Source: Podarcis pityusensis | Taxonomy: Eukaryota | Assembly (NCBI GenBank): GCA_964106645.2 | Contig: CAXKZF020000232.1 | Strand: one strand, 5' to 3' | DNA length: 64,000 nt | In this document: positions 1 to 64,000 of the stretch, piece after piece | Numbering within the stretch: position 1 is the first letter of the stretch | Layout: each line of letters opens with the position of its first letter | Program-made: the position numbers and the translations under genes | The notes under the pieces: generated by a model | What the model was told of the DNA's origin: nothing | Database searches by the model: none | What the model saw: the letters and a program-made list of their open reading frames with translations, nothing else

Positions 1-197
1 GAACTCCCGAACGGCACCGTTGTGATCGACAAGCCGGGCCACGGGACCAGCAGGCATGGTCTTCGCACGTACGTCCGTACCGACCGAGGTTGGCACTCGC
101 CTGACAACCCCGGTGGCTACACCCACTTCGACCTGGACAGTCGCGTGGACAGGGGCACTGCTCGCATCCTGTACATCCCGCCGATCAGAAGGGGCCG

Positions 198-536
198 ATG
201 ATGCTCTCCCATGACTACACAGACCTGCTGGAAGCAGCCCGTCCCTCGTTCGGCCCCCGCATCTACGTCAAGTACGTGGGTGAGTACACCGAGACGCAGA
301 CAGCAGTGAGGACCGGCAACCCGACCCACTACTGCTATGAGGACAAGGTGTACAGCTCGATGGGCACCGCCCGGAATGCGTGCACCAAGTACCTCAACTA
401 CCGCGACGACACGATGGATGTGCACGCATTCTTCTACGTGTGGAACGCAGAGGATGAGTTCTGGCAGCTCGATTCGTACGTAGCCAAGGGCACCAAGGCT
501 GACGACCTCCCCTGGCGCAAGAAGAAGACCAAGTAG
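198..536 (+). CDS. hypothetical protein (similar to 58997..59290)
   Basis: ORF with phage-like codon usage; C-terminal W.L..YV..GT.A...PW motif shared with 58997..59290. Confidence 0.75.
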   Translation: MMLSHDYTDLLEAARPSFGPRIYVKYVGEYTETQTAVRTGNPTHYCYEDKVYSSMGTARNACTKYLNYRDDTMDVHAFFYVWNAEDEFWQLDSYVAKGTKADDLPWRKKKTK

Positions 537-548
537 TTAGGAGCCCTA

Positions 549-863
549 ATGCAGGTCAAGCTCACAGGCGACTCTTGGCCTGCATGGCTCAAGGGTCACA
601 CGCTCAAAGTGGTTCACAAGCGAGACCACTGGTATGTCACTAGGGATAACGGCGACCACCGCTTCAATGGGTGGAACGTAGAGACCGGAAGCGACCGTTC
701 CGGCTTCGGTGGTGTGTTTGTGGAAGAGGACTCACCCCCGCCGAAGAAGGTCGGCTCCCCCGCCAAGATCATCGCGATCAAGTCTGCGATCGGTCGCGGT
801 CTCGAAGACGACACCGACCCCGCAGAAATCCTGAACACCATCCTCGACATCCTCGACAGTTAG
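549..863 (+). CDS. hypothetical protein
   Basis: ATG overlaps the TTAGGAGCCCTAA RBS motif. Confidence 0.75.
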   Translation: MQVKLTGDSWPAWLKGHTLKVVHKRDHWYVTRDNGDHRFNGWNVETGSDRSGFGGVFVEEDSPPPKKVGSPAKIIAIKSAIGRGLEDDTDPAEILNTILDILDS

Positions 864-871
864 GAGCCCTA

Positions 872-1288
872 ATGGGTTACACCACAGCGCAGATCAAGGG
901 GCTCCTGCTCTCGGCAGCGAGCCTCGCCGCAGACCTCCAGGGTCTCGGTGAAGAGGAGACCAAGGCTCAACTTCTCCAGGTTGAAGCGGAGTTCGATGTG
1001 TGGTACGATAGGCTCTCGACCGGTCACCGGATGGAGGACTACTACGGCAACACCGTGGCCCTTGCCAAGGGTGACAGGATCAAGCTCCTGGGCTATGACT
1101 GGGACGACGCGTACCTCAAGGACCTATGCGGTGGGCAAGGCACGATCCACACGATCACGGACTTCGATACCGACACGGACCCACTGTTCAAAGACAAGCT
1201 AGGCGACCACCGCTACGCATGTCGAGGCGAGAACAACAGCCGAGGCTTTGTCAAGGTGAACGAGGACGACGAGGAGGAAGATGAGTGA
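872..1288 (+). CDS. hypothetical protein
   Basis: Start reassigned to ATG 872 after the TTAGGAGCCCTAA motif. Confidence 0.7.
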   Translation: MGYTTAQIKGLLLSAASLAADLQGLGEEETKAQLLQVEAEFDVWYDRLSTGHRMEDYYGNTVALAKGDRIKLLGYDWDDAYLKDLCGGQGTIHTITDFDTDTDPLFKDKLGDHRYACRGENNSRGFVKVNEDDEEEDE

Positions 1289-2651
1289 GCGGCTGACTCC
1301 CGACTCAGAACAGGAAGCGGCCATCCAGCGGATGGTCGATGAGCCGACACGGGCGGCTCTGAATGCAAGTCAGTATGGCACGGGCAAGACACTCGTGACC
1401 ATTGAGGTAGCGGGTCGGCTTGGCGGTCGGATCAATCTGATCGTCGCCCCGCTGTTCACGAAGTATTCGTGGGAGACCTCGATCAAGACGCAGTACCCGG
1501 ACGCTAACGTGCGACACATCAATAGCCTCAAGCGTGGGAAGGAAGCGCTTGAGGCTATGCTCGCAGGTGAGGCTGGCTGGTACATCATCGGGCGTGAGTA
1601 CCTGATGTCTCGCTCCGTGGTGGAGCGGGTGCAGAAGTTCTCACCCAACATCGACTTCATGGCGTACGATGAGTGCGCGAAGTGGGCCAACCGCAAGTCG
1701 GTCGGGTTCAAGAACATGAAGAAGATCAAGCCTCAGTACCGCATGGCGTTGAGCGCCACGCCAGCGGCCAACAAGTTCGACGGGCTGTACGCCATCACGA
1801 AGTGGCTGTGGTCTGATCTCGTGCCGAACTCATACTGGTTGTGGGTCGGGACGTGGTGTGCCACGCAGGAGGACTACTTCTCTGGCACCTCCGTGGTCGG
1901 TGAGAAGGAGCCGGGCAAGTACGTGCAGCAACTGCCGTGCTACATTAGGCTCACTAAAGACTTCGGTGACCCGATCGAAATGGACATCGAGGTCGAGCTC
2001 TCCCCCAAGGAGCGCAAGGTCTACGACCAGTTCGAGAAGCGGTCGATCGTCTGGCTCAAGGACAACCCGATGGTTGCCAAGTTCCCGATCACCAAGCGCA
2101 TCAGGCTGAGACAGATGAGCCTCGGTGAGTTGGAGGTCGAGTACCTGGAAGATGGTACAGAGATCGTTGGCTTCCCCGAGGATATGAAGTCGAGCAAGTA
2201 CGACGCGCTCGAAGGCATCCTCAGCGAGTACCGAGAGCCCGCTCTGATCTTGACAGACAGCCAGAAGTACGCTAGAGTGGTAGTCAAGAGGCTGGTGGAA
2301 GACGGCTACGCGGCGATGGAGTGGTCGGGTGACGTGCCTGAGAAGGAACGACACGCGATCAAGGATGCGTTCGTGAACGACACGGGTGTGGACTACATCG
2401 TGGCAACCATCCCTGCAATCGGTGAGGGAGTGGACGGACTACAGCATCGTGCACGACTGATGATCTGGCTGTCCCGGTCGGACAACAACATGCTGAACAT
2501 GCAGGCGTTCCGACGCCTGTACCGCCGAGGCCAGAAGCACCAGGTTGTGAGCATCGACATCGTTGCTCGTGACACATACGACAAGGGACAACTGAGTGAC
2601 CTCATCACGAGGGAGCTTGTGATGAACGATAGCCTGAGAAGGGCTGGTTAG
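1281..2651 (+). CDS. SNF2/SF2-family DNA helicase
   Basis: GTGKT Walker A, YDEC Walker B, LSATP motif III, GEGVDGLQ and QAFRRLYRRGQ motifs. Confidence 0.9.
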   Translation: MSERLTPDSEQEAAIQRMVDEPTRAALNASQYGTGKTLVTIEVAGRLGGRINLIVAPLFTKYSWETSIKTQYPDANVRHINSLKRGKEALEAMLAGEAGWYIIGREYLMSRSVVERVQKFSPNIDFMAYDECAKWANRKSVGFKNMKKIKPQYRMALSATPAANKFDGLYAITKWLWSDLVPNSYWLWVGTWCATQEDYFSGTSVVGEKEPGKYVQQLPCYIRLTKDFGDPIEMDIEVELSPKERKVYDQFEKRSIVWLKDNPMVAKFPITKRIRLRQMSLGELEVEYLEDGTEIVGFPEDMKSSKYDALEGILSEYREPALILTDSQKYARVVVKRLVEDGYAAMEWSGDVPEKERHAIKDAFVNDTGVDYIVATIPAIGEGVDGLQHRARLMIWLSRSDNNMLNMQAFRRLYRRGQKHQVVSIDIVARDTYDKGQLSDLITRELVMNDSLRRAG

Positions 2652-2659
2652 GAGACCTA

Positions 2660-2968
2660 ATGTTCAAGCAGATCACAGAGGACGCAAAGGGACTGAGGTT
2701 CGGACAGGGACCGTGGGGTGAGGTGTTCGACACGGTGCTGACAGCAGTGCTCGTCGGCATCCCCATGTACCTGGCAGGACACGCCGCGGCGTCGGACTGG
2801 AACCCGACGTTCAACTTCATCATGGCGGCTCTGGTCACGGCGATCATGGGTGTCGGTGCGTTCGTTGGCTGGCACACCACCTTCATGTCGGGCCAGATCG
2901 ACCAGATCAAGAAGGACACGAAGCGTATGCTGACGCAGATGAGGACGGGACATGGCTTCAAGAGCTGA
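2660..2968 (+). CDS. membrane protein
   Basis: Two hydrophobic segments; RBS motif. Confidence 0.7.
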   Translation: MFKQITEDAKGLRFGQGPWGEVFDTVLTAVLVGIPMYLAGHAAASDWNPTFNFIMAALVTAIMGVGAFVGWHTTFMSGQIDQIKKDTKRMLTQMRTGHGFKS

Positions 2969-3161
2969 GCTCGAAGAGGAATGGCGCGAGTTCCAACTGT
3001 GGCAGCGCAACCAGGGACTTGAGTACCCGGACTACCTTGAGTGGCGTGACCTGATCATCGCCCGAGAGAACATGGCAACACTCAAGTCATTCATCGAAGG
3101 GTTCGATGATGAAGACGAGATCAAGGTGAGCGAACTGAGGGAGATCCTTAAGCATGTCTAG
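2952..3161 (+). CDS. hypothetical protein
   Basis: Coupled ORF. Confidence 0.6.
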   Translation: MASRAELEEEWREFQLWQRNQGLEYPDYLEWRDLIIARENMATLKSFIEGFDDEDEIKVSELREILKHV

Positions 3162-3468
3162 CATCTTCGGGTACATGGACCCAGACGACTTGGGCCGGTA
3201 CACGAAGCTGATCGACGCGATGGATGGGACAGAGCCTTGCAGCATCGAGCCCGATCTCTTCACAGGAGATTGGGTTCGAGGTGTAAAGGAAGAGACAGCG
3301 CAGGCACTCTGCGCTGATTGTCCCGTCCTTGATCTATGCCGAGACTACGCCGTACAGGCCAAGGAACCGTACCATGTGTGGGGCGGAACCACACCAACAT
3401 CAAGAGGCATCCCGAGAGGATACAGACCGTGGGCAGACCGCTCGAAGACGGACAACTCAAGTACCTAG
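3154..3468 (+). CDS. whiB: WhiB-family transcription factor
   Basis: Four Cys (C...CADCPV...C) and HVWGG motif. Confidence 0.9.
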   Translation: MSSIFGYMDPDDLGRYTKLIDAMDGTEPCSIEPDLFTGDWVRGVKEETAQALCADCPVLDLCRDYAVQAKEPYHVWGGTTPTSRGIPRGYRPWADRSKTDNSST

Positions 3469-4139
3469 TCACAGACATGCTCAACCATCCGTCTGAGCGA
3501 GACAACCAGCGACTTGTGGGGGCCAGCCAGATCGGTAACCCCTGCGACTTCTGCTTGGGCAACTCGATGGTCGGGCACGGACAGCGACGCAACAACTACT
3601 GGATGGGTGCCCGCATCGGCACCGCGATCCATGCGGCGCTGGAGACTGAGGCTGAGAAGCATGTGGATCGACCACGGCAGAATCAGTTCGAGGCTCTTAG
3701 GGGCGCTAAGATCGAGCAGAAGATCATCCTCGGTACCATCCAGGGGTACGGCACGATCAAGTCTAAGCCGGACCTGGTGCTGACAGAGCACGACCACCTC
3801 GTGGACTACAAGACCACGACGAAGGCGAAGCTTGCGAAGATGAAGGCGTCCGGCACCGTGCCGATCCAGTACGTCTACCAGCAGCAGCTCTACGCTTGGG
3901 GCCTCAACAACGACGGCATCAAGGTCAAGCGTATCTCGTTGGTGTTCATCGCTCGTGACGGCTCGAATGAGAACGACATCTGGGTACACTCGTTCGACTA
4001 CGATGAGTCCAAGGCACTCGCTGCTTGGGATCGTCTGGACGCGATCTGGAAGTACCTGGAAGAGAACAACCACGACACATCAGGCTTGACAAGTCACCAC
4101 GAATGCTGGTACTGTGTCAACATGCTAGGGAGGATCTAA
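3429..4139 (+). CDS. Cas4-like / PD-(D/E)xK exonuclease
   Basis: GASQIG.PC..C, GTAIH, KPD, DYKT, QQQLY, C-terminal CWYC; GTG start after GAGAGGA. Confidence 0.85.
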   Translation: MGRPLEDGQLKYLVTDMLNHPSERDNQRLVGASQIGNPCDFCLGNSMVGHGQRRNNYWMGARIGTAIHAALETEAEKHVDRPRQNQFEALRGAKIEQKIILGTIQGYGTIKSKPDLVLTEHDHLVDYKTTTKAKLAKMKASGTVPIQYVYQQQLYAWGLNNDGIKVKRISLVFIARDGSNENDIWVHSFDYDESKALAAWDRLDAIWKYLEENNHDTSGLTSHHECWYCVNMLGRI

Positions 4140-8643: not shown

Positions 8644-9023
8644 TGGAGAAGTACGAAGCACTGAGGTTGGCCCGGACGTACTGGGAAATGGAGGGCAGGG
8701 GCGACACCGCTCAGTACGCCCTCCTCCTGGCACGGACAGGCATCTTCACCCACATGGAACTGTCTGCCATCTGTGACATCACCCCCTACGTTGCCCGCAA
8801 GGTGACGCAGGGGGTGGACCTCCCTCGCTACAGGTTCGGGGAGAAGTTCGATCCGCGGACGATCGACTCCATGCTGGTACTGCTAGAGCACTACCAGGCG
8901 TGGGGCAACCTGCCACGAGGGGTGCTGGACCTCATCCTGCCGTACACCAGCCTGACCGTAGTAAGCCGAATGACAGGGATTGGAGTGAGTGACCTTGCGA
9001 ATCCTGAACTTGTACAGTCTTGA
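8643..9023 (+). CDS. putative HTH DNA-binding protein
   Basis: Two HTH-like segments (ELSAICDIT, VVSRMTGIG). Confidence 0.55.
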   Translation: MEKYEALRLARTYWEMEGRGDTAQYALLLARTGIFTHMELSAICDITPYVARKVTQGVDLPRYRFGEKFDPRTIDSMLVLLEHYQAWGNLPRGVLDLILPYTSLTVVSRMTGIGVSDLANPELVQS

Positions 9024-10431
9024 GTCTCCGACCCCTCGGCAGCTTGACGCTATCGGCAGCATGCTCCGTGCCTATGAGAAGTCGCGCGGCGTAGACATCA
9101 AGGTTGTCGCTGAGAAGTGGGGACGTGGTAAGGTGCTGTGCCTCGGTCAAGCACCTGAGGGTGTGTGGTACGGGCAGGAGTTCCAGGTCACCTACTCCCC
9201 CAAGCAGTTCGAGTCCAAGGCGAACGCGGCTACCGTGTTCGACTCGGCGCTCGACAACTACTTCGGCAACGTCAGCGGTCTGCCGAACAACGCGAACGTC
9301 TCGCAGTTCTGGTACGCGGAGCACTTCGAGCGCAACTTCATGCAGAGGATCGACCCCACCCAGCCGGTGGCTGTGGACGTGGAGACTGGCGGCGTGCTGG
9401 GTGAGACTGTCACCTCACGCACAGCGCCGATGATCACCATTGCGTTCGCGCAGGGTCCGAACGCTGTCGTGCTCAAGGTGTGGGACGACCAGGAGGATTG
9501 GGAGGAAGATTCCTCCGAGGTGGAGCGCCGCAAGACGAACCAGGTGTTCCTTGTGAACTTCCTGCCGCTCATCGAGAAGCCGATCTTCCACAACGGCAAG
9601 TTCGACATCCAGGTGATCGAGTCCAACACAGGCGTTAGGATGCCTAACTGGTTCGACACGATGCTGGCTCATCACGCATTGAACCACGCCGCTCGGGAGC
9701 ACGGACTCAAGGTACTGTGCAAGCGGTACTTCGATGCCGATGACTGGGAGGCCGGGATCAAGGAGTGGATCAAGGGTAACGTCAAGGACTACAACAAGAT
9801 CCCGAAGACACACCTGGCGAACTACAACGGCTACGATGTGCTGTGGACGTACCGCCTGTGGCAGATGCTGGCACCGATGATCGAAGCAGACGAGGCGGCT
9901 CAGGCTGCACTGTTCTTCGAAATGCAGGTGGCTGACTTCCTCTCCGACGTGGAGGCTGTCGGCATCCCGTTCTCTCAGTCGCAGGGCAACTACCTGCAAG
10001 CGATCTACGCACACCAGGCCGACGAGGCTCTAGCAAAGCTGCGAGCCCTGGTCAAGGACAAGGGGTTCAACCCTGGCTCCCCACAGCAGGTCAAGAAGTG
10101 GCTAGAGGGACAGCTTGGATACCCTATCGCCTCCACTAAGGAGGAGGCGATCGACATTATCAAGGGCGAGGCACGGAACCCTGACGTGGTGACGTTCTGC
10201 AACCTGCTCATCGAGTACCGCAAGGCAAAGAAGATGATGAGCACGTACCTGCATGCTTGGGAAGATGCGTCTCGGATCGAGGGGGATGCGCGGGTCCACC
10301 CGACGTTCCACGTACACGGCACGACTACTGGTAGACTGTCTAGTAGCGATCCTAACGCGCAGAATGTACCCCGAGACAAGACGATCAGGAAAATGGTGAC
10401 CCTCGATGACCGAAACCAACTCAAGCTTTAG
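8989..10431 (+). CDS. polA: DNA polymerase I, N-terminal part (3'-5' exonuclease + thumb)
   Basis: ExoI VAVDVETG, ExoII HNGKFD, ExoIII YNGYD, TTTGRLSSSDPNAQNVP. Confidence 0.9.
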   Translation: MTLRILNLYSLESPTPRQLDAIGSMLRAYEKSRGVDIKVVAEKWGRGKVLCLGQAPEGVWYGQEFQVTYSPKQFESKANAATVFDSALDNYFGNVSGLPNNANVSQFWYAEHFERNFMQRIDPTQPVAVDVETGGVLGETVTSRTAPMITIAFAQGPNAVVLKVWDDQEDWEEDSSEVERRKTNQVFLVNFLPLIEKPIFHNGKFDIQVIESNTGVRMPNWFDTMLAHHALNHAAREHGLKVLCKRYFDADDWEAGIKEWIKGNVKDYNKIPKTHLANYNGYDVLWTYRLWQMLAPMIEADEAAQAALFFEMQVADFLSDVEAVGIPFSQSQGNYLQAIYAHQADEALAKLRALVKDKGFNPGSPQQVKKWLEGQLGYPIASTKEEAIDIIKGEARNPDVVTFCNLLIEYRKAKKMMSTYLHAWEDASRIEGDARVHPTFHVHGTTTGRLSSSDPNAQNVPRDKTIRKMVTLDDRNQLKL

Positions 10432-10630
10432 GTACGTAGAGTACCGCGGCGACGATGCGGCAGACGTCCTCGTGACACTGCTGATGAACCTCCGCCACGC
10501 AGATGCTGAGGGCGAGCGTGAGGTTCACGACGGCGGCTCAGAGACAGCACGACACGCAGAGCCCGAACGAATCGTTGGGTTCCAGCCCAACCCGGAGGAG
10601 GAACATGACGAACGTCATCCTGAACGTTGA
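10406..10630 (+). CDS. small acidic protein between the two polA halves
   Basis: 74-aa ORF overlapping both polA ORFs. Confidence 0.5.
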   Translation: MTETNSSFRYVEYRGDDAADVLVTLLMNLRHADAEGEREVHDGGSETARHAEPERIVGFQPNPEEEHDERHPER

Positions 10631-11360
10631 CCTGTCACAGGCAGAGCTCCGCGCGATGGCTCTGCTGTCCAACGATGAGTGGATGATCGGTGCCCTGCAA
10701 GAGGGTACGGGTGACTTCTTCTCGAACCACATGATGCCCGTGTGCTTCCCACAGCACCTCGTCAACTTCGGCACGATGGAGGCGTTCGCTGAGCAGGAGC
10801 CCGTCCTGTTCAAGGAGGAGCGCACCAAGGTCAAGGGTGTCCAGTACGGGCTGGCGTTCGGACGCACGGCACCAGCGATCGGCAAGGCGCTGGGCATGAG
10901 CACGGCTGAGGCCAAGACCATCATCAGCAACTACTTCGCCACGGCACCGAACTTCGCACAGTGGCGCGAGGATGTGAAGGCTGCTGCTATCGACCAGAGC
11001 AAGCGGGACCTCCTCGTGTCACCTACGGGCCGCAGGTTCCAGTCGGAAATGGTCACGACGAAGAACATGCATGCGATCCAGCGAGAGGCGCTGTCGTTCC
11101 TGCCTCAGTCCTCGTCGTCTGACATTTGCCTCATGTCTGCGATGCTCCTGCACCAGGAGATCCGGGCAAACAAAATCCCCTTCCGCATCTTCAACGTCGT
11201 TCACGACGCGATCATGCTGGAAGGGGACGAGGCTTACGCCGCGATGGTAGGGGAACTAACGGGGTCGATCATGCGGGAAGTCGGTGCGAAGATGATGGGC
11301 GATGCCGTGCCATTCCTCAGCGACTACAGCTTCGGGCCTAGCTGGTCTGATCTCTCCTAG
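10605..11360 (+). CDS. polA: DNA polymerase I, C-terminal part (palm/fingers)
   Basis: Motif A DLSQAELR, motif B RTKVKGVQYGLAFG, motif C VHDA; own GGAGGAGG RBS. Confidence 0.9.
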   Translation: MTNVILNVDLSQAELRAMALLSNDEWMIGALQEGTGDFFSNHMMPVCFPQHLVNFGTMEAFAEQEPVLFKEERTKVKGVQYGLAFGRTAPAIGKALGMSTAEAKTIISNYFATAPNFAQWREDVKAAAIDQSKRDLLVSPTGRRFQSEMVTTKNMHAIQREALSFLPQSSSSDICLMSAMLLHQEIRANKIPFRIFNVVHDAIMLEGDEAYAAMVGELTGSIMREVGAKMMGDAVPFLSDYSFGPSWSDLS

Positions 11361-11544
11361 CCATAGCCTCCTCCACAGCAAGTCCAAGGACAGTCAAGAA
11401 GTCCTTGGACTTGCTTCGTACTACGAACTCATCTTCACCGACCACACACTGCCAGCGGTTGCGGCCTAGGTCTTCGATCTCGATGTACATGTGGTGCTGT
11501 GCCTGCTCGCGGAAGACAGACCAGTAGAGGGGCTTAGTGCTCAT
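11338..11544 (-). CDS. hypothetical protein
   Basis: 68-aa ORF from ATG 11544 with an extended -10 (TGATATAGT) upstream. Confidence 0.55.
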   Translation of the reverse strand: MSTKPLYWSVFREQAQHHMYIEIEDLGRNRWQCVVGEDEFVVRSKSKDFLTVLGLAVEEAMARRDQTS

Positions 11545-11571
11545 ATTAGTACACACTATATCACATTGCGC

Positions 11572-11600
11572 TTGCGTTTCCGTGCAACATGTGCTATGAT
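11572..11600 (+). promoter_or_regulatory. promoter of tRNA block 1 leader
   Basis: TTGCGT-17nt-TATGAT, extended TG, ATG 6 nt downstream (leaderless). Confidence 0.75.
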
Positions 11601-11606
11601 AGACAC

Positions 11607-11678
11607 ATGACGCACTACGAAGTCCGAATGCACGCCGCCCTCCCGGCGTACTTCGACGTGCGTCTACACTCATGGTGA
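11607..11678 (+). CDS. attenuator leader peptide 1 (MTHYEVRMHAALPAYFDVRLHSW)
   Basis: Leaderless mini-ORF; codons match block-1 tRNAs; last codons complementary to the terminator 5' arm. Confidence 0.75.
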   Translation: MTHYEVRMHAALPAYFDVRLHSW

Positions 11679-11694
11679 CCTCCTAACAGAGAAG

Positions 11695-11731
11695 ATCCCC
11701 TGAGTGCTTGACACTCGGGGGATTTTCTGTT
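11695..11731 (+). terminator. terminator/attenuator before tRNA block 1
   Basis: ATCCCCTGAGTG-CTTGA-CACTCGGGGGAT stem followed by TTTCTGTT. Confidence 0.8.
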
Positions 11732-11748
11732 AGTATGTTCATCTACTA

Positions 11749-11821
11749 GGGTCATTAGCTCCAACGGTAGAGCGCCTGTTTTGCAAGCAGGATGTTGTCG
11801 GTTCGAATCCGACATGATCCA
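11749..11821 (+). tRNA. tRNA-Ala(TGC)
   Basis: Full cloverleaf, G3:U70. Confidence 0.95.
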
Positions 11822-11822
11822 C

Positions 11823-11898
11823 TGCGGTGTAGGGGAGTTCGGTTGTCCCCGCCAGTCTCATAATCTGGAGATCGTGGGTTCAAATCCCACCACCGTAA
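11823..11898 (+). tRNA. tRNA-Met(CAT)
   Basis: Cloverleaf, loop CTCATAA. Confidence 0.9.
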
Positions 11899-11923
11899 CG
11901 GTATAACTCAATAGTGATACTAT

Positions 11924-11995
11924 CCGAATGTACGCAAGTGGTATGCGGCGAAGTTTGGGACTTCGAAGTCAGAGGTTCGACCCCTCTCATTCGGA
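11924..11995 (+). tRNA. tRNA-Pro(TGG)
   Basis: Cloverleaf. Confidence 0.9.
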
Positions 11996-11997
11996 CT

Positions 11998-12074
11998 GTG
12001 ACTGTGACGGAGCGGCCTAACGTCGCTGATTGTGGATCAGTAGTTCGTGGGTTCGAATCCCACCAGTCACCCCA
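11998..12074 (+). tRNA. tRNA-His(GTG)
   Basis: Cloverleaf, C73, encoded CCA. Confidence 0.9.
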
Positions 12075-12075
12075 T

Positions 12076-12147
12076 GTGTTTGAAGCTAAACGGTTCAGCG
12101 CTCGGTTGTCAGCCGAGAGATAGCGGGTTCAACTCCCGTCAGACACG
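12076..12147 (+). tRNA. tRNA-Asp(GTC)
   Basis: Cloverleaf, G73. Confidence 0.9.
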
Positions 12148-12197
12148 CATAGTCCCCGGCCTGAGAGTGACACCAAGCACTTACTCCGGGGGCGTCC

Positions 12198-12270
12198 GGT
12201 CCATTAGAGTAGCGGTAATCTCGTCTGATTCTCAGTCAGAAGATCACGGGTTCGAATCCCGTATGGACTA
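12198..12270 (+). tRNA. tRNA-Glu(CTC)
   Basis: Cloverleaf. Confidence 0.92.
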
Positions 12271-12405
12271 CGGTGAGACTATAGGTACCTAGCAGACTTG
12301 TAGCATCACTACACAACTGAATAGTCGGCGTCGTAGTACCTTCCATATTCAACCGAAGACAAGGTAGAGTGTTGTGCAAGGGCCGCGAGGATCACGCCGA
12401 CGTTA

Positions 12406-12478
12406 GGCTCGTTAGAATAGCGGTCAGTTCCCCAGGCTTTCAACTTGGATGGCACCGGTTCGAATCCGGTACGAGTCA
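12406..12478 (+). tRNA. tRNA-Glu(TTC)
   Basis: Cloverleaf. Confidence 0.92.
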
Positions 12479-12479
12479 C

Positions 12480-12560
12480 GGTTCGCATGGCACAAGGTGT
12501 GCTCGCTGGTTGTAACCCAGTCGCCTTCGGGCATGGGGAGTTCGATTCTCTCGCGGACCA
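12480..12560 (+). tRNA. tRNA-Tyr(GTA)
   Basis: Cloverleaf with long variable arm. Confidence 0.85.
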
Positions 12561-12614
12561 CTTGTGTGGGATTCCATTCACACAGCCCTGTACGCTGGTA
12601 CGTGCAGGGCACCC

Positions 12615-12687
12615 GCCTCGCAAGCTCAGTTGGAAGAGCGCCGGATTGAAACCCCGGAGGTTGCCAGTTCGACTCTGGCGCTTGGCA
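12615..12687 (+). tRNA. tRNA-Phe(GAA)
   Basis: Cloverleaf; two acceptor-stem mismatches. Confidence 0.8.
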
Positions 12688-12707
12688 CTCCAAACGAAGG
12701 AGGAAGC

Positions 12708-12803
12708 ATGAATACACTTTGGTGCTGGTTCACCGGGGGACATCGTAAGGTCTACGACTTTGGGTATCCGGTCTGTTCCAAGTGTGGCATCCTACTTCGG
12801 TAG
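12708..12803 (+). CDS. small Cys/His-containing peptide
   Basis: AAGGAGG RBS; C...GH...CSKC. Confidence 0.6.
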   Translation: MNTLWCWFTGGHRKVYDFGYPVCSKCGILLR

Positions 12804-12814
12804 GAGGTGATGAA

Positions 12815-12895
12815 ATGACACGGTGGGACTGGGGAAGATTCTTCTTTGGGGTTGCCCTGTGGTGTGTATACGCTGCGGCGTCCATCGCCTACTAG
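12815..12895 (+). CDS. small membrane peptide
   Basis: AGGAGGT RBS; hydrophobic, 26 aa. Confidence 0.5.
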   Translation: MTRWDWGRFFFGVALWCVYAAASIAY

Positions 12896-12969
12896 CACGA
12901 GTGGCCCAACTGGTAGAGGCACCCTCTCAAACGGGGTTCAGCGTGTGGGTTCGAAGCCCACCTCGTGTA
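12895..12969 (+). tRNA. tRNA-Leu(CAA)
   Basis: Cloverleaf, short variable region. Confidence 0.8.
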
Positions 12970-13022
12970 CAACACAGGGTTGTGACCCACCACTCGGAAG
13001 GCTCCACCGTGACGGAGCACAT

Positions 13023-13096
13023 GCCTCTCTATCCCAACTGGTAGAGGAAGCAGGCTTAGACCCTGTACAGTGAGAGTTCGAATCTCTCGGGAGGCA
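13023..13096 (+). tRNA. tRNA-Leu(TAG)
   Basis: Cloverleaf, short variable region. Confidence 0.88.
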
Positions 13097-13104
13097 CAAT
13101 CAAG

Positions 13105-13133
13105 TTGACATCGAGCAGAGAGTGTGCTATAGT
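13105..13133 (+). promoter_or_regulatory. promoter of tRNA block 2 leader
   Basis: TTGACA-17nt-TATAGT, extended TG, ATG 6 nt downstream. Confidence 0.85.
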
Positions 13134-13139
13134 ATAACT

Positions 13140-13205
13140 ATGAACACGGTAACAGGAACCAAGCAGTCGGGCAATATCGTCCGTCTCCTCGGGGTGCCGT
13201 CGTAA
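13140..13205 (+). CDS. attenuator leader peptide 2 (MNTVTGTKQSGNIVRLLGVPS)
   Basis: Leaderless mini-ORF; codons match block-2 tRNAs; GGGGTG complementary to the terminator 5' arm. Confidence 0.78.
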   Translation: MNTVTGTKQSGNIVRLLGVPS

Positions 13206-13224
13206 AGCAATCTAAGCTCTACCC

Positions 13225-13258
13225 ACCCCACGATCTTCGGATGGTGGGGTTTTTACTT
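13225..13258 (+). terminator. terminator/attenuator before tRNA block 2
   Basis: ACCCCACGATC-TTCG-GATGGTGGGGT followed by TTTTACTT. Confidence 0.85.
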
Positions 13259-13351
13259 GGATGGATAACCCGAGCGAGGACTATCGGGCGCTGTCTTGAA
13301 AACAGTTGGCGATTGCATCGCGTAGGAGTTCGAGCCTCCTTCCATCCGCCA
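13259..13351 (+). tRNA. tRNA-Ser(TGA)
   Basis: Cloverleaf, long variable arm, GCCA end. Confidence 0.9.
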
Positions 13352-13374
13352 CACAACTCAATAGTGATACTAAT

Positions 13375-13459
13375 GGAATCGTGACAGAGCGGCAATGTGT
13401 CGGCTTGCTAAGCCGTAGCCTACCTCACGGTAGCGAAGGTTCGACCCCTTCCGATTCCG
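13375..13459 (+). tRNA. tRNA-Ser(GCT)
   Basis: Cloverleaf, long variable arm. Confidence 0.9.
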
Positions 13460-13578
13460 CACAGGAGGCTCGCATACTAGTTCGCACCCGACTTCAACCG
13501 ACTTGGGGAAGAGACAGGGTGGCTGGCGGTCCCAATACAGGTTCCCTCTCAGACCTGGCTCCGAAAAGAGAGGGGTAC

Positions 13579-13651
13579 GGATTGTTAGCTCAGTTGGTAG
13601 AGCAAGCGCCTCTTAAGCGTTAGGTCCTGGGTTCGAGCCCCAGACGATCCA
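13579..13651 (+). tRNA. tRNA-Lys(CTT)
   Basis: Cloverleaf. Confidence 0.95.
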
Positions 13652-13716
13652 CAGACTCAGACAGCCTAGGTTACAGTTCTGAGCGCCAGCGGAGGTTCGC
13701 CTCGTGGCTGGCATCC

Positions 13717-13790
13717 GGGTTACTGATGTTCAACGGTTAGCATGGCTGTCTTCCAAACAGCTCGTGGGGGTTCGAATCCCCCGTAGCCCT
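13717..13790 (+). tRNA. tRNA-Gly(TCC)
   Basis: Cloverleaf, U73. Confidence 0.88.
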
Positions 13791-13791
13791 C

Positions 13792-13864
13792 GCCCTTATA
13801 GCTCCAACGGTAGAGCAGCGATCTTGTAAATCGATGGTTGGGAGTTCGAATCTCTCTAGGGGCA
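13792..13864 (+). tRNA. tRNA-Thr(TGT)
   Basis: Cloverleaf. Confidence 0.92.
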
Positions 13865-13865
13865 C

Positions 13866-14249
13866 ATGGCAGGATACTACGAGCGGCACCCGCCCGAGGC
13901 GTGGGCCACAGCACTACAAGCACTCAAGGAGCAGAGGGGTTATGGCGAAGCATCAAGGCGATCAGGCATCAGCACTCGTGGAATTAGCAAAAGGTATCCG
14001 GGTATGGGTCTCCCGAGCGGTAGACGATATCCTGATAGCGTACGCGCTGACGCACAGAGACTACTTGACGATCGCGTCTCGTATCGAGAGGTACAGGCTA
14101 CGCTAGGTATCTCCCGCCACACAGTCCGTGACTGGTTCCCTGGTCGTGGCTGGACAGCACAGGAGGGTGGACAGTTCAAGTCCATGCTCCACTACAACTC
14201 AACAGTGACACTCAAGATGTGGGACAACAACCGCCGCAATCGCGGTTAG
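13866..14249 (+). CDS. tandem HTH DNA-binding protein
   Basis: Two HTH-like repeats (YGEASRRSGIS, SYREVQATLGISRHTV). Confidence 0.7.
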   Translation: MAGYYERHPPEAWATALQALKEQRGYGEASRRSGISTRGISKRYPGMGLPSGRRYPDSVRADAQRLLDDRVSYREVQATLGISRHTVRDWFPGRGWTAQEGGQFKSMLHYNSTVTLKMWDNNRRNRG

Positions 14250-14259
14250 GGTCCCTAAT

Positions 14260-14332
14260 GGATGATTAGCTCAGAGGCCAGAGCAGTTGGCTTACACCCA
14301 ATCGGTCGGGGGTTCGACTCCCTCATCATCCA
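14260..14332 (+). tRNA. tRNA-Val(TAC)
   Basis: Cloverleaf. Confidence 0.92.
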
Positions 14333-14334
14333 CG

Positions 14335-14501
14335 AGGTAGGTTTCCTCACACTCAAACACTTGCCAGCGCACCGGGCTTTTACCCCGGAGAGCGGGGACG
14401 CTATAGCTTCAATGGAAGAAGTGCCCGCCGATACGCGGGAGGTTGCTGGTTCGAGTCCAGCTAGCGGGAACACAGGAACTTGTGCAAGTGAGCACCTACC
14501 T
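14335..14501 (+). ncRNA. putative structured RNA with embedded Ile(GAT)-like tRNA domain (14397-14469)
   Basis: Outer stems AGGTAGGT/ACCTACCT and CACTTGC/GCAAGTG enclose a tRNA-like fold with a 6-nt anticodon loop. Confidence 0.55.
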
Positions 14502-14509
14502 ATACACTT

Positions 14510-14581
14510 TCCCCCATAGCTCAGCGGCAGAGCAGAGAGCTGTTAACTCTAAGGCCCCTGGTTCGATCCCAGGTGGGGGAG
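14510..14581 (+). tRNA. tRNA-Asn(GTT)
   Basis: Cloverleaf. Confidence 0.95.
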
Positions 14582-14582
14582 C

Positions 14583-14795
14583 GCGCGGAGTGCGAACTCC
14601 AAACACGATGAAGGGTCGCGCTATAATTAGCGACTAGGGTCGGTGCCACGGGGGTGCCGTGGAGTGCTGACCTCACAATAGCAGCGTCGCGGCTGCCGTG
14701 TAGCATCGTAGGGTTGGCCTCCTACGGGGTTGCTCGTCTGGAGATTCGATACCAGATGTTGGTGTGATTCGAACTTGCGGCACTCGGTTCCGCGC
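14583..14795 (+). ncRNA. putative ~213-nt structured ncRNA
   Basis: Ends pair (GCGCGGAGT/GTTCCGCGC); several internal hairpins; bounded by tRNAs. Confidence 0.5.
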
Positions 14796-14799
14796 ACAA

Positions 14800-14875
14800 G
14801 CCTTCGTATCAGCTCTGGCTACGAACCAGTTGAAACTGTAACGGACACATGGGAGTTCGAATCTCTCCGGGGGCA
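14800..14875 (+). tRNA. atypical tRNA-Arg(ACG) lacking a normal D-arm
   Basis: Acceptor stem, anticodon arm CTGG-CTACGAA-CCAG and canonical T-arm; 21-nt variable region. Confidence 0.65.
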
Positions 14876-14879
14876 CCCT

Positions 14880-14950
14880 TGCCCGTTAGTGTAACGGTAA
14901 CACGCCTGGTTCTGGCCCAGGTACTCTTGGTTCGAATCCAGGATGGGCAG
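14880..14950 (+). tRNA. tRNA-Gln(CTG)
   Basis: Cloverleaf. Confidence 0.93.
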
Positions 14951-14954
14951 CGAT

Positions 14955-15028
14955 GGTGAGGTGGCTGAATGGCTAGGCGCGTGGCTGCAACCCTCGACAT
15001 GCCGGTTCGACCCCGGTCCTCACCTCCA
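14955..15028 (+). tRNA. tRNA-Cys(GCA)
   Basis: Cloverleaf, U73, CCA. Confidence 0.9.
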
Positions 15029-15029
15029 C

Positions 15030-15098
15030 CCCGCCAGCATGGAGCACGAGGGTGTTCTAAGCCCGGTAGTGAGGGTTCGATTCCTTCTGGCGGGACCA
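15030..15098 (+). tRNA. atypical tRNA-Arg(TCT) with reduced D-arm
   Basis: CCCGCCA/TGGCGGG acceptor, ACCA end, T-arm, GGGT-GTTCTAA-GCCC. Confidence 0.55.
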
Positions 15099-15099
15099 A

Positions 15100-15174
15100 G
15101 GGTTATTAGCTCAGCGGTAGAGCGCTATCCTGATAAGATAGAAGTCCGGGGTTCAACTCCCTGATAACCCACCA
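15100..15174 (+). tRNA. tRNA-Ile(GAT)
   Basis: Cloverleaf, CCA. Confidence 0.95.
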
Positions 15175-15213: not shown

Positions 15214-15438
15214 ATGACTGTCACTGTTTACACCAAGAACAATTGCTTCGGATGCGGAGCGACCAAGCGCAAGCTCACCGAGGAGGGCATCGAGTTCATC
15301 GAGAAGAACGTGGACACAGACGAGAAGGCACGAGACAAGGTTATCGCCCTTGGCTTCATGCAGATGCCCGTCGTCGTGACCGACAAGGACTCATGGTTCG
15401 GATATGATCCGAGTCGGATTGCACAGATCACAGCATAA
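15214..15438 (+). CDS. nrdH: NrdH-like glutaredoxin
   Basis: VTVYTK..CFGC, QMPVV, W.GY.P; promoter TTGCTT-17-TATACT upstream. Confidence 0.9.
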   Translation: MTVTVYTKNNCFGCGATKRKLTEEGIEFIEKNVDTDEKARDKVIALGFMQMPVVVTDKDSWFGYDPSRIAQITA

Positions 15439-16738: not shown

Positions 16739-17001
16739 GCACCATCTATGGGATCAACGCCAACCAACTCACCATCCCCACCAGTCCCCCGCAGGACCCA
16801 CGCATCAACGTAGCATACGCGGAGATCACACAACTCCAGAGGCAGGTGAGTAACCTGGAGTTGACCAAGATCAGCCACGCCTCGCAGATCCAGGCACTCC
16901 AGGGTCAGCTCCTCGAAGAGATCAATCAGCGCCGGGAACTCCAACGTCTCGTGGAGGATCTGGTCAAGGACCTCACCGCAGGTGTTGACACGGAGGACTA
17001 G
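16735..17001 (+). CDS. coiled-coil hypothetical protein
   Basis: Coupled ORF, GAGGAG RBS. Confidence 0.65.
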   Translation: MSTIYGINANQLTIPTSPPQDPRINVAYAEITQLQRQVSNLELTKISHASQIQALQGQLLEEINQRRELQRLVEDLVKDLTAGVDTED

Positions 17002-17103
17002 TATGTGCTATACTGGTCTTGCAACACAAGAGGGACCTAGCGCCTACGACCAGCTAGTCACAGTCTGACAAACTACTGTCCAGGGGGCTTCGGCCCCCTG
17101 TCT

Positions 17104-60210: not shown

Positions 60211-60534
60211 ATGGACGACATGGAAGCAGTCGTCGCACTGCTGACCGAGGGCCTGGACATCGCTGATGTTCAGGCCCTCGGGGTCTCCCTCATGGAGAAG
60301 GCAAACCTCGCGATCCTCGAAGACCGAGGCGGAGAACTCCCGAACGGCACCGTTGTGATCGACAAGCCGGGCCACGGGACCAGCAGGCATGGTCTTCGCA
60401 CGTACGTCCGTACCGACCGAGGTTGGCACTCGCCTGACAACCCCGGTGGCTACACCCACTTCGACCTGGACAGTCGCGTGGACAGGGGCACTGCTCGCAT
60501 CCTGTACATCCCGCCGATCAGAAGGGGCCGATGA
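60211..60534 (+). CDS. hypothetical protein
   Basis: GAGGAGG RBS; 3' part also at window 1-201. Confidence 0.65.
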   Translation: MDDMEAVVALLTEGLDIADVQALGVSLMEKANLAILEDRGGELPNGTVVIDKPGHGTSRHGLRTYVRTDRGWHSPDNPGGYTHFDLDSRVDRGTARILYIPPIRRGR

Positions 60535-61613
60535 TGCTCTCCCATGACTACACAGACCTGCTGGAAGCAGCCCGTCCCTCGTTCGGCCCCCGCATCTACG
60601 TCAAGTACGTGGGTGAGTACACCGAGACGCAGACAGCAGTGAGGACCGGCAACCCGACCCACTACTGCTATGAGGACAAGGTGTACAGCTCGATGGGCAC
60701 CGCCCGGAATGCGTGCACCAAGTACCTCAACTACCGCGACGACACGATGGATGTGCACGCATTCTTCTACGTGTGGAACGCAGAGGATGAGTTCTGGCAG
60801 CTCGATTCGTACGTAGCCAAGGGCACCAAGGCTGACGACCTCCCCTGGCGCAAGAAGAAGACCAAGTAGTTAGGAGCCCTAATGCAGGTCAAGCTCACAG
60901 GCGACTCTTGGCCTGCATGGCTCAAGGGTCACACGCTCAAAGTGGTTCACAAGCGAGACCACTGGTATGTCACTAGGGATAACGGCGACCACCGCTTCAA
61001 TGGGTGGAACGTAGAGACCGGAAGCGACCGTTCCGGCTTCGGTGGTGTGTTTGTGGAAGAGGACTCACCCCCGCCGAAGAAGGTCGGCTCCCCCGCCAAG
61101 ATCATCGCGATCAAGTCTGCGATCGGTCGCGGTCTCGAAGACGACACCGACCCCGCAGAAATCCTGAACACCATCCTCGACATCCTCGACAGTTAGGAGC
61201 CCTAATGGGTTACACCACAGCGCAGATCAAGGGGCTCCTGCTCTCGGCAGCGAGCCTCGCCGCAGACCTCCAGGGTCTCGGTGAAGAGGAGACCAAGGCT
61301 CAACTTCTCCAGGTTGAAGCGGAGTTCGATGTGTGGTACGATAGGCTCTCGACCGGTCACCGGATGGAGGACTACTACGGCAACACCGTGGCCCTTGCCA
61401 AGGGTGACAGGATCAAGCTCCTGGGCTATGACTGGGACGACGCGTACCTCAAGGACCTATGCGGTGGGCAAGGCACGATCCACACGATCACGGACTTCGA
61501 TACCGACACGGACCCACTGTTCAAAGACAAGCTAGGCGACCACCGCTACGCATGTCGAGGCGAGAACAACAGCCGAGGCTTTGTCAAGGTGAACGAGGAC
61601 GACGAGGAGGAAG

Positions 61614-63801: not shown

Positions 63802-64000
63802 TCACAGACATGCTCAACCATCCGTCTGAGCGAGACAACCAGCGACTTGTGGGGGCCAGCCAGATCGGTAACCCCTGCGACTTCTGCTTGGGCAACTCGA
63901 TGGTCGGGCACGGACAGCGACGCAACAACTACTGGATGGGTGCCCGCATCGGCACCGCGATCCATGCGGCGCTGGAGACTGAGGCTGAGAAGCATGTGGA

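What the first reader, a model, noticed from the sequence alone, without database searches (positions are those of the whole stretch)
11572..11735. Attenuator 1: leader MTHYEVRMHAALPAYFDVRLHSW covers every block-1 amino acid
TTGCGT-17-TATGAT is followed 6 nt later by ATG 11607. Codons CAC, TAC, GAA, ATG, GCG, CCG, TTC, GAC and CTA are read by block-1 tRNAs His-GTG, Tyr-GTA, Glu-TTC, Met-CAT, Ala-TGC, Pro-TGG, Phe-GAA, Asp-GTC and Leu-TAG. 13 of residues 2-17 are block-1 amino acids and all nine types occur. CACTCA (11667-72, His-Ser codons) is complementary to TGAGTG (11701-06) in the terminator 5' arm. A ribosome reaching the stop would mask the antiterminator; one stalled upstream would not.
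Basis: partly seen in the sequence, partly recalled or inferred. Interest (0 to 1): 0.9.

Follow-up and report, generated by a model that had tools for sequence, protein, structure and literature searches.

The report
Leader-peptide attenuators before phage tRNA genes
A phage puts a tiny test gene in front of each block of its tRNA genes, built from exactly the amino acids whose tRNAs follow. This looks like a switch that transcribes those tRNAs when the cell runs short of them, and I found no earlier description of it.

Summary
At 11572-11735 there is a promoter, then an ATG with no ribosome-binding site 7 nt after the -10. A 23-codon ORF follows, then a -33 kcal/mol hairpin with a U-tract, 15 nt before tRNA-Ala. 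The ORF contains all nine amino acids whose tRNAs follow; it is the only one of 271 comparable short ORFs in this genome that does.

A second unit (13105-13254) precedes the second tRNA block and is built from that block's amino acids.

The same units occur in related metagenomic phage contigs and in cultured Microbacterium phages. I collected 16 first-block and 18 second-block leaders. They are only 30-38% identical, yet 74% versus 16% of their residues are block-1 amino acids (p 8e-51; 1.6e-21 in loci fetched after the hypothesis was fixed).

Leader content tracks gene content. Ala is absent where tRNA-Ala is outside the block, and Trp is present where tRNA-Trp is inside it. One locus with fused blocks has a single mixed leader.

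Best explanation: leaderless leader-peptide attenuators that open tRNA transcription when a matching charged tRNA is scarce.

The transcription start, translation, termination and the sign of control are all inferred. The antiterminator is the weakest part. A conserved second promoter sits inside terminator 1.

The parts
11572..11600 (+). Promoter P1: -35 TTGCGT (11572-77), 17-nt spacer, extended -10 TGTGCTATGAT (11590-11600)
   Evidence: Read directly. The extended -10 motif occurs only 3 times in the window, each before a tRNA block, against 0.12 expected. The same motif sits before the homologous leaders in relatives.
11607..11678 (+). Leaderless leader ORF 1: 23 codons plus TGA. The predicted transcription start is the A of the ATG. 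Codons 3-17 form the sensor stretch.
   Evidence: There is no SD sequence upstream, and the ATG lies 7 nt after the -10. It holds 15 block-1 residues of 22, and all nine types. It is unique among 271 short ORFs in this respect. The signal is frame-specific.
11609..11663 (+). Hairpin inside the leader ORF, a possible pause structure
   Evidence: Part of the minimum-energy fold. An ORF-internal hairpin is predicted in all units. In the leader-2 family, 6 of its 7 pairs show compensatory changes.
11667..11706 (+). Candidate antiterminator: the last three codons, the stop and the following bases (11667-11681) pair with the terminator 5' arm (11695-11706)
   Evidence: It gains -10.6 kcal/mol against -4.5 +/- 2.3 when the upstream partner is shuffled (z -2.6). 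It is lost when a ribosome is placed on the stop codon. Folded alone, z is only -1.07.
11683..11733 (+). Intrinsic terminator 1: core stem 11695-11706 / 11712-11723, loop 11707-11711, U-rich tract 11723-11731. The lower stem is an A-rich strand pairing with the U-tract.
   Evidence: (-33.3 kcal/mol, z -7.5). Every homologous unit has a strong hairpin here (-12 to -36 kcal/mol) with a different sequence.
11708..11736 (+). Embedded promoter P2: TTGACA in the hairpin loop, 17 nt, TAGTAT. The predicted start is about 11743, 6 nt before tRNA-Ala.
   Evidence: Found by the scanner (10 of 12 matches, TG present). Conserved in 12 of 13 first-position units and in 1 of 12 second-block units.
11749..13097 (+). 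tRNA block 1: Ala, Met, Pro, His, Asp, Glu, Glu, Tyr, Phe, Leu, Leu, with two small SD-led ORFs at 12709-12804 and 12816-12896
   Evidence: The gene order is conserved in relatives.
13105..13133 (+). Promoter of unit 2: TTGACA, 17 nt, TGTGCTATAGT
13140..13205 (+). Leaderless leader ORF 2: 21 codons plus TAA. Codons 2-15 are all block-2 amino acids.
   Evidence: (17 block-2 residues of 20).
13225..13254 (+). Intrinsic terminator 2: GC stem followed by TTTTT
   Evidence: Compensatory stem changes relative to L001.
13259..15174 (+). tRNA block 2. It starts with an unusual tRNA-Ser(UGA) 4-5 nt after the T-run, then Ser, Lys, Gly, Thr, Val, a weak tRNA-like gene, Asn, Gln, Cys, Ile. An HTH gene lies at 13866-14249.
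   Evidence: There is no room for a promoter between terminator 2 and the first tRNA.

Best explanation
These are ribosome-mediated transcription attenuators placed in front of phage tRNA operons.

Proposed mechanism for unit 1:
1. P1 starts the RNA at the A of ATG 11607, so the leader is translated as a leaderless mRNA.
2. Codons 3-17 call once to three times for each of the nine amino acids whose tRNA genes lie downstream.
3. If all nine charged tRNAs are available, the ribosome keeps up with the polymerase and reaches the stop at 11676-11678. There it covers 11667-11681.
4. The terminator's 5' arm then stays free, the 11695-11723 hairpin forms, and transcription ends at the U-tract.
5. If any one charged tRNA is scarce, the ribosome is held upstream. 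Then 11667-11681 pairs with the 5' arm, the terminator cannot form, and the polymerase runs into tRNA-Ala and the rest of block 1.
6. The new tRNAs relieve the stall, which makes this a negative feedback loop.

Unit 2 (13105-13254) does the same for block 2 and is the only way into that block. For block 1, a second promoter embedded in the terminator adds transcription that the attenuator does not control.

What the sequence comparison shows: the units exist, they are conserved, the ORF is under frame-specific selection for composition, and that composition follows the downstream tRNA gene content.

What is inferred: the transcription start, translation of the ORF, termination efficiency, the antiterminator, and the direction of control.
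For: Composition in the window:
- Leader 1 has 15 block-1 and 6 block-2 residues. Leader 2 has 3 and 17 (Fisher p 4e-4).

Across 16 first-block and 18 second-block leaders (window, relatives L001-L093, and Microbacterium phages L094-L096):
- Pooled counts are 199/70 versus 55/297 (p 8e-51). In loci fetched after the hypothesis was fixed they are 72/29 versus 21/137 (p 1.6e-21).
- Mean pairwise peptide identity is only 0.30 and 0.38.
- In second-block leaders, codons 4-14 are block-2 amino acids in 18 of 18, with 3-8 different residues per position.
- The bias exists only in the ORF's frame.
- The last five or so codons, which overlap the pairing segment, are unbiased.

Leader content follows gene content:
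- tRNA-Ala heads block 1 in the 60-kb family, and all 13 of its leaders have 2-4 Ala.
- In Pumpernickel, Cece and Zooman, tRNA-Ala lies outside block 1 and the leaders have no Ala.
- Those phages carry tRNA-Trp inside block 2, and their leader 2 has Trp in the sensor stretch.
- In L087 the two blocks are fused with no unit between them, and the single leader is mixed.

Architecture:
- A -10 element lies 5-9 nt before an SD-less ATG in every unit.
- A strong hairpin follows every leader.
- The first tRNA of block 2 starts 3-34 nt after the hairpin, so read-through is obligatory.

Antiterminator:
- Pairing of the terminator 5' arm with the stop-codon region beats shuffles in 23 of 25 units (mean z -2.05).
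- It is lost when a ribosome is placed on the stop.

Host context: a WhiB gene in the window and its relatives points to actinobacterial hosts. Leaderless short-ORF attenuators are documented there (bioRxiv 10.1101/834739).
Against: - No experimental data exist: no transcription start, ribosome footprint or 3'-end map.
- The antiterminator is weak. It gives -10.6 versus -32 kcal/mol for the terminator, and z is only -1.07 when the segment is folled alone and shuffled as a whole. In two units it is no better than chance.
- The design lacks a structure that enforces termination when no ribosome loads, so untranslated RNA would read through by default.
- Each amino acid appears only one to three times, not in runs as in classical leaders, so sensitivity to mild shortage would be low.
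- P2 inside terminator 1 bypasses attenuator 1.
- Several first-block hairpins have poor U-tracts.
- Some relatives have a promoter before block 1 but no leader (L008, L090, L020, L022), so the unit is dispensable.
- Codon choice is not tuned to strict Watson-Crick or standard wobble reading by the phage anticodons.
- The pooled p-values count related sequences as if they were independent.
Confidence: 0.72

Rival explanations
1. The parts are the same but the sign is opposite. Translation of the leader to its stop promotes read-through, for example because a closely following ribosome disturbs the base of the terminator or shields the RNA from Rho. The tRNAs would then be made only while translation runs well.
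For: The stop codon lies only 4 nt before the extended lower stem of terminator 1, and 3-26 nt before the hairpin in other units. A terminating ribosome would therefore melt part of the stem. The antiterminator is weak on its own.
Against: The 12-bp GC-rich core stem starts 16 nt after the stop, outside a ribosome footprint. The stop-region segment is complementary to the terminator 5' arm more than chance allows in 23 of 25 units, which this model does not need. Positive feedback on tRNA supply gives no obvious benefit.
Confidence: 0.12
2. The short ORFs encode micropeptides with a function of their own. The hairpins simply end those small genes, and the tRNAs are transcribed from P2 and other promoters.
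For: A conserved promoter sits inside terminator 1. A loose shared core around Leu-Pro-Ala-Phe-Glu-Asp occurs in many first-block leaders.
Against: Residue order is scrambled, with mean identity 0.30-0.38, while composition is kept. Composition follows which tRNA genes lie downstream, as shown by the Ala, Trp and fused-block cases. Block 2 has no promoter after its terminator.
Confidence: 0.08
3. These are chance ORFs in an untranslated 5' leader. The hairpins would be processing or stabilising structures of the tRNA precursor.
For: High-GC genomes carry many spurious short ORFs. Rfam has no matching leader family.
Against: The ORF is kept open with an ATG 5-9 nt after the -10 in 37 units. The composition bias is frame-specific. 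Only 1 of 271 short ORFs matches. The out-of-sample p-value is 1.6e-21.
Confidence: 0.03

Closest known systems
Classical leader-peptide attenuators of amino-acid operons (trp, his, leu, thr, pheA; the multivalent ilvGMEDA and ilvBN leaders) - from established knowledge
   Same: A short ORF on the same transcript is rich in the codons to be sensed. It is followed by an intrinsic terminator and by an alternative pairing that a ribosome at the stop codon prevents. The ilv and thr leaders already sense more than one amino acid.
   Different: The controlled genes are tRNA genes, not biosynthetic enzymes, so the product feeds back directly on the sensor. Nine or ten amino acids are sensed with one to three codons each, instead of runs of one. 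Initiation is leaderless. No clear 1:2 structure enforces termination without translation. The system is in phages. There is no Rfam leader family match.
Leaderless polycysteine short-ORF attenuators of mycobacteria (Canestrari et al., bioRxiv 10.1101/834739)
   Same: Actinobacterial setting. A leaderless short ORF is the first cistron, and ribosome stalling on sensor codons raises downstream expression.
   Different: [quoted passage not shown] Here the downstream genes are untranslated tRNAs and the switch must act on transcription.
pheST (pheM leader) attenuation and T-box riboswitches: control of translation-apparatus genes by tRNA charging - from established knowledge
   Same: They regulate components of the decoding machinery in response to the state of the cognate tRNA.
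   Different: pheM senses only Phe and controls a synthetase. T-boxes bind uncharged tRNA directly without a ribosome, and no T-box match was found.
Tandem P1-P2 promoters of bacterial rRNA and tRNA operons - from established knowledge
   Same: Two promoters in series lie before stable-RNA genes, one regulated and one more constitutive.
   Different: Here the downstream promoter is built into the loop and 3' arm of the terminator of a leader peptide unit. I know of no precedent for this.

Membership tests
Ribosome-mediated (leader-peptide) transcription attenuator | Short translated ORF at the 5' end of the regulated transcript | tested here: met
   The ORF is present and kept open in 37 units. 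It shows frame-specific composition selection. Translation itself was not shown.
Ribosome-mediated (leader-peptide) transcription attenuator | Leader enriched in codons for the regulatory amino acid(s) | tested here: met
   Enrichment is for the whole set of amino acids of the downstream tRNA block, not for a run of one.
Ribosome-mediated (leader-peptide) transcription attenuator | Intrinsic terminator between the leader and the regulated genes | tested here: met
   Predicted hairpin of -33.3 kcal/mol (z -7.5) followed by a U-tract. A hairpin is present in all units. Several first-block units have weak U-tracts.
Ribosome-mediated (leader-peptide) transcription attenuator | Mutually exclusive antiterminator whose formation depends on ribosome position | tested here: inconclusive
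   Better than shuffles in 23 of 25 units (mean z -2.05) and masked by a ribosome at the stop. It is weak in energy, with z -1.07 when folded alone.
Ribosome-mediated (leader-peptide) transcription attenuator | Read-through responds to supply of the cognate charged tRNA | not testable with these tools
   Needs reporter or in vitro assays.
Rfam leader families (His_leader RF00514 and others) | Score at or above the family's gathering threshold | tested here: not met
   The best + strand match is His_leader at 23.1 bits against a threshold of 49 (E 0.52). Nothing reaches gathering.
Mycobacterial leaderless polycysteine sORF attenuators | Leaderless short ORF (start codon at the transcript 5' end, no SD) | tested here: met
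   By prediction only: the ATG lies 5-9 nt after the -10 and no SD is present.
Mycobacterial leaderless polycysteine sORF attenuators | Run of Cys codons, with control by unmasking the next gene's ribosome-binding site | tested here: not met
   There is no run of any codon, and the downstream genes are tRNAs with no ribosome-binding site.
T-box riboswitch | Specifier loop and T-box motif recognised by the Rfam model | tested here: not met
   No T-box match at gathering or at E up to 1 in 11540-13380.

The most novel reading that the evidence does not exclude
The units are on-demand tRNA-supply sensors of the phage. Each sensor amino acid is represented by only one to three codons, so the switch would respond mainly to near-complete loss of a tRNA species. 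Such loss occurs when a host anticodon nuclease or tRNA-degrading defence is triggered, or when host tRNAs decay after shut-off. The phage would then make its replacement tRNAs exactly when and where decoding fails. This would be a regulatory counter-defence circuit that reads the state of the whole decoding system through two test peptides, which together cover 19 of the 20 amino acids.
Probability: 0.3. Interest if true: 0.95.

Novelty: new variant of a known kind. Interest (0 to 1): 0.9.

Why it matters
Why phages carry tRNA genes has been debated for about 50 years, and how those genes are controlled is almost unknown. If this reading holds, it would be the first case I know of in which tRNA genes are controlled by a leader peptide. 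It would also be a case in which one leader senses nine or ten amino acids at once.

It makes the question testable. The same units are present, unannotated, in cultured Microbacterium phages (Zooman, Cece, Pumpernickel, Big4, A3Wally) that grow on harmless laboratory hosts.

It would also give a compact natural sensor of decoding capacity. And it predicts that many unannotated short ORFs next to phage tRNA arrays are regulatory.

Tried and rejected
- Phage database searches: near and distant DNA searches with the leader region hit only tRNA genes, so the window's phage has no close cultured relative.
- IMG/VR: a single-protein search found nothing. An alignment-based search was needed.
- Rfam: no leader family at gathering or relaxed thresholds.
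- RNAalifold on the 11 first-block units predicted nothing. The terminators differ in sequence and do not align, so hairpins were scored unit by unit instead.
- Strict codon-anticodon matching is not a discriminating test. Many family-box codons end in C while the phage tRNAs have U34, so I make no claim of codon-level tuning.
- The third promoter, before tRNA-Trp (16985-17014), has no Trp-containing leader and no U-tract. It is not an attenuator of this kind.
- A further leaderless short ORF in Zooman (L097 5414-5479), before tRNA-Met, Met and Cys, does not convincingly match its block. I left it out.
- Curtobacterium phage Yappy, the nearest cultured relative by polymerase, has no tRNA cluster.
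I rewrote it to read the ORFs by coordinate.
- One look-up returned no DNA.

Full report
WHAT THE WINDOW IS

The window is a circularised 60,333-bp genome of a tailed phage. Bases 1-3667 repeat exactly at 60334-64000.

It encodes a capsid protein, a tape-measure protein, an M23 peptidase, a primase, a split family-A DNA polymerase and a WhiB regulator. WhiB genes point to an actinobacterial host.

No close cultured relative exists. The polymerase C-terminal half is at most 42% identical to any phage in the database.

Twenty-one tRNA genes lie between 11749 and 17176 on the + strand. One more, an unusual tRNA-Ser(UGA) at 13259-13347, was missed by both programs. I recognised it by alignment to a relative.

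THE OBSERVATION

- The -35 TTGCGT is at 11572.
- A 17-nt spacer follows, then the -10 TATGAT, which ends at 11600 and is preceded by TGTGC.
- ATG is at 11607, with no Shine-Dalgarno sequence.
- The ORF has 23 codons and ends at 11678.
- A hairpin has its core arms at 11695-11706 and 11712-11723, followed by a U-rich tract.
- tRNA-Ala starts at 11749.

The extended -10 motif TGTGCTATNNT occurs three times in the window, against 0.12 expected. The sites are 11590, 13123 and 17004, each just upstream of a group of tRNA genes.

The upstream gene is divergent. It most likely starts at 11544 on the minus strand. The longer minus-strand ORF that overlaps the leader has an implausible N-terminus.

A SECOND UNIT AND THE PARTITION OF THE AMINO ACIDS

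After tRNA-Leu(TAG), a second unit has the same build:
- a promoter at 13105-13133;
- an ATG at 13140, 6 nt after the -10;
- a 21-codon ORF;
- a GC stem with five T's (13225-13254).

The tRNA-Ser(UGA) gene starts 4-5 nt later.

The tRNA genes after unit 1 serve nine amino acids: Ala, Met, Pro, His, Asp, Glu, Tyr, Phe and Leu. Those after unit 2, in this family, serve ten: Ser, Lys, Gly, Thr, Val, Asn, Arg, Gln, Cys and Ile. Only Trp stands apart.

| Leader | Block-1 residues | Block-2 residues | Types covered |
|---|---|---|---|
| Leader 1 | 15 | 6 | all 9 block-1 types |
| Leader 2 | 3 | 17 | 9 of 10 block-2 types |

- Fisher's exact p for the window alone is 4e-4.
- Of 271 ATG-started ORFs of 14-26 codons in the genome, only leader 1 has all nine block-1 types. 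Leader 2 is one of three with at least nine block-2 types.

RELATIVES

The polymerase half has many metagenomic relatives on contigs of about 60 kb. I fetched loci by exact protein look-up and by alignment-based scans. The tRNA gene order is conserved in them.

Nearly all of them carry a -10 element, an SD-less ATG 5-9 nt later, an ORF of 12-25 codons and a strong hairpin. These sit before block 1 and again before block 2.

The same module, with the same gene order, is present in cultured Microbacterium phages of about 190 kb: Pumpernickel, Cece, Zooman, Big4 and A3Wally. There the regions carry no annotation.

The collection is 16 first-block leaders, 18 second-block leaders and 3 mixed ones. 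All are printed.

WHY THE COMPOSITION IS SELECTED

The peptides are only 30% (first block) and 38% (second block) identical on average, and residue order is scrambled. Composition is nevertheless kept.

| Set | First-block leaders (block-1 / block-2 residues) | Second-block leaders (block-1 / block-2 residues) | p |
|---|---|---|---|
| All units | 199 / 70 | 55 / 297 | 8e-51 |
| Eight loci fetched after the hypothesis was fixed | 72 / 29 | 21 / 137 | 1.6e-21 |

- These p-values treat related sequences as independent, so they overstate the evidence. The out-of-sample result and the positional pattern do not depend on that.
- In second-block leaders, codons 4-14 are block-2 amino acids in all 18 units, with three to eight different residues at each position. 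The sole exception is Trp at codon 9 in the three Microbacterium phages.
- The bias is seen only in the ORF's own frame. The block-1 share is 0.76, 0.32 and 0.46 in frames 0, +1 and +2 for leader 1, and 0.17, 0.34 and 0.50 for leader 2.
- The bias fades to about 50% in the last five codons.

LEADER CONTENT FOLLOWS GENE CONTENT

Three natural experiments support this.
1. In the 60-kb family, tRNA-Ala heads block 1 and all 13 leaders have two to four Ala. In the Microbacterium phages, tRNA-Ala lies far downstream, outside block 1, and their leaders have none.
2. In those phages tRNA-Trp lies inside block 2, and their leader 2 has a Trp codon in the sensor stretch.
3. In L087 the two blocks abut with no unit between them. 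The single leader upstream mixes amino acids of both blocks. L011 and L091 have similar mixed leaders but are cut off too early to check.

STRUCTURE AND MECHANISM

- The whole leader-1 RNA folds at -62.7 kcal/mol (z -8.0) and the terminator at -33.3 kcal/mol (z -7.5).
- Every unit has a hairpin of -12 to -36 kcal/mol after the stop. The sequences are unrelated, which explains why an alignment-based fold fails.
- In the window, folding the transcript up to the terminator loop shows the 5' arm pairing with the bases around the stop codon (11667-11681).
- That pairing forms when a ribosome is held at codons 5-14. It is lost when a ribosome sits on the stop.
- Against shuffles of the upstream partner, the energy gain is -10.6 versus -4.5 (z -2.6) for leader 1 and -10.8 versus -3.8 (z -2.9) for leader 2. 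It is negative in 23 of 25 units, with mean z -2.05.
- Folded alone, the leader-1 segment is not remarkable (z -1.07). This is the weakest link.
- A hairpin inside the ORF is predicted in all units. In the leader-2 family it has compensatory changes at six of seven pairs and could act as a pause site.
- The sensor codons lie far enough upstream that a ribosome stalled on them leaves the pairing segment free.

TWO COMPLICATIONS

First, the loop of terminator 1 reads TTGACA, and 17 nt downstream lies TAGTAT (11708-11736). This embedded promoter is present in 12 of 13 first-position units and in both units of the Microbacterium phages. It is present in only 1 of 12 second-block units of the 60-kb family. 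Block 1 therefore has a route that bypasses attenuator 1.

Block 2 of the 60-kb family has no such route, because its first tRNA starts 3-34 nt after the hairpin. All of its transcription must pass terminator 2. That is hard to reconcile with a plain end-of-gene terminator.

Second, some relatives have a promoter but no leader before block 1 (L008, L090, L020, L022).

COMPARISON WITH WHAT IS KNOWN

The logic is that of classical leader-peptide attenuation. The multivalent ilv and thr leaders are its nearest form, and the leaderless polycysteine short ORFs of mycobacteria are its nearest actinobacterial relative.

It differs in four ways:
- the target is tRNA genes;
- it senses nine or ten amino acids with one to three codons each;
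- initiation is leaderless;
- a promoter is embedded in the terminator.

No Rfam family matches. Eight full-text searches, and a check of a recent paper on phage tRNA arrays, found no description of such units. Absence from that library is not proof of absence.

VERDICT

The comparative signal is very strong. The attenuator reading is the best-supported explanation (about 0.7).

The direction of control and the antiterminator remain inferences. I rate it a new variant of a known kind, of high interest.

Noticed in passing
window 1-3667 and 60334-64000: The two stretches are identical (0 mismatches). The window is therefore one 60,333-bp phage genome read past its join: either a circular permutation or a terminal repeat.
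   Followed up: yes
window 11679-11689; also L001, L002, L006, L013, L015, L020, L028, L034, L088 just after the leader stops: A CCTCC(TTTCT) motif, identical to the anti-Shine-Dalgarno 3' tail of 16S rRNA, follows the stop codon in 10 of 25 units. The background is 4% of windows of that size. Its role is unexplained.
   Followed up: partly
window 16985-17103: A third promoter of the same class (TTGACA, 18 nt, TGTGCTATACT) lies before tRNA-Trp. A GC hairpin at 17082-17101 lacks a U-tract, and there is no Trp-containing leader.
   Followed up: partly
window 13259-13347: An unusual tRNA-Ser(UGA) with an odd D-arm. ARAGORN missed it, and it scores below threshold as tRNA-Sec in Rfam (36 bits). 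It is homologous to a called tRNA-Ser in L001, with compensatory acceptor-stem changes.
   Followed up: yes
window 14399-14466: A weak tRNA-like gene (Rfam 32 bits) whose anticodon loop looks irregular. It may be a decayed or non-standard tRNA. The window lacks the tRNA-Arg(ACG) that relatives carry in block 2, although leader 2 has an Arg codon.
   Followed up: no
window 11904-11922, 13354-13372, 14195-14213: A 19-nt repeat (CAACTCAATAGTGATACTA and variants; 0 expected by chance) lies just before tRNA-Pro and tRNA-Ser(GCT), and within the 3' end of the HTH gene 13866-14249, about 46 nt before tRNA-Val. These may be internal promoters or processing sites. Similar motifs occur in relatives.
   Followed up: partly
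window 8989-10431 and 10503-11360: The family-A DNA polymerase is split into two ORFs with a small ORF between them. The same split is seen in all close relatives, whereas Curtobacterium phage Yappy has a single gene.
   Followed up: partly
window 12709-12804, 12816-12896, 13866-14249, 15214-15438: Protein genes sit inside and just after the tRNA array. Two small Cys/Trp-rich ORFs have good SD sequences, and the second ends inside the start of tRNA-Leu(CAA). There is also an HTH protein and a glutaredoxin.
   Followed up: no
L094 8057-8098 and 14090-14161; L095 9027-9068 and 14609-14680; L096 9030-9083 and 14486-14557: Cultured Microbacterium phages Pumpernickel, Cece and Zooman carry both leader units, unannotated. 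Big4, A3Wally and one record with a masked name also match. In them, both terminators carry the embedded TTGACA promoter.
   Followed up: yes
L097 (Zooman 87900-102000): The tRNA region of Zooman also encodes a peptidyl-tRNA hydrolase, an RtcB-like RNA ligase and a Ro-like RNA-binding protein, as annotated in the record. This gene set fits repair of damaged tRNAs.
   Followed up: no
L008 about 2520-2570; L090 about 12835-12885: In two relatives the block-1 promoter is followed by a short hairpin and tRNA-Ala, with no closed leader ORF. These are natural variants lacking attenuator 1.
   Followed up: partly
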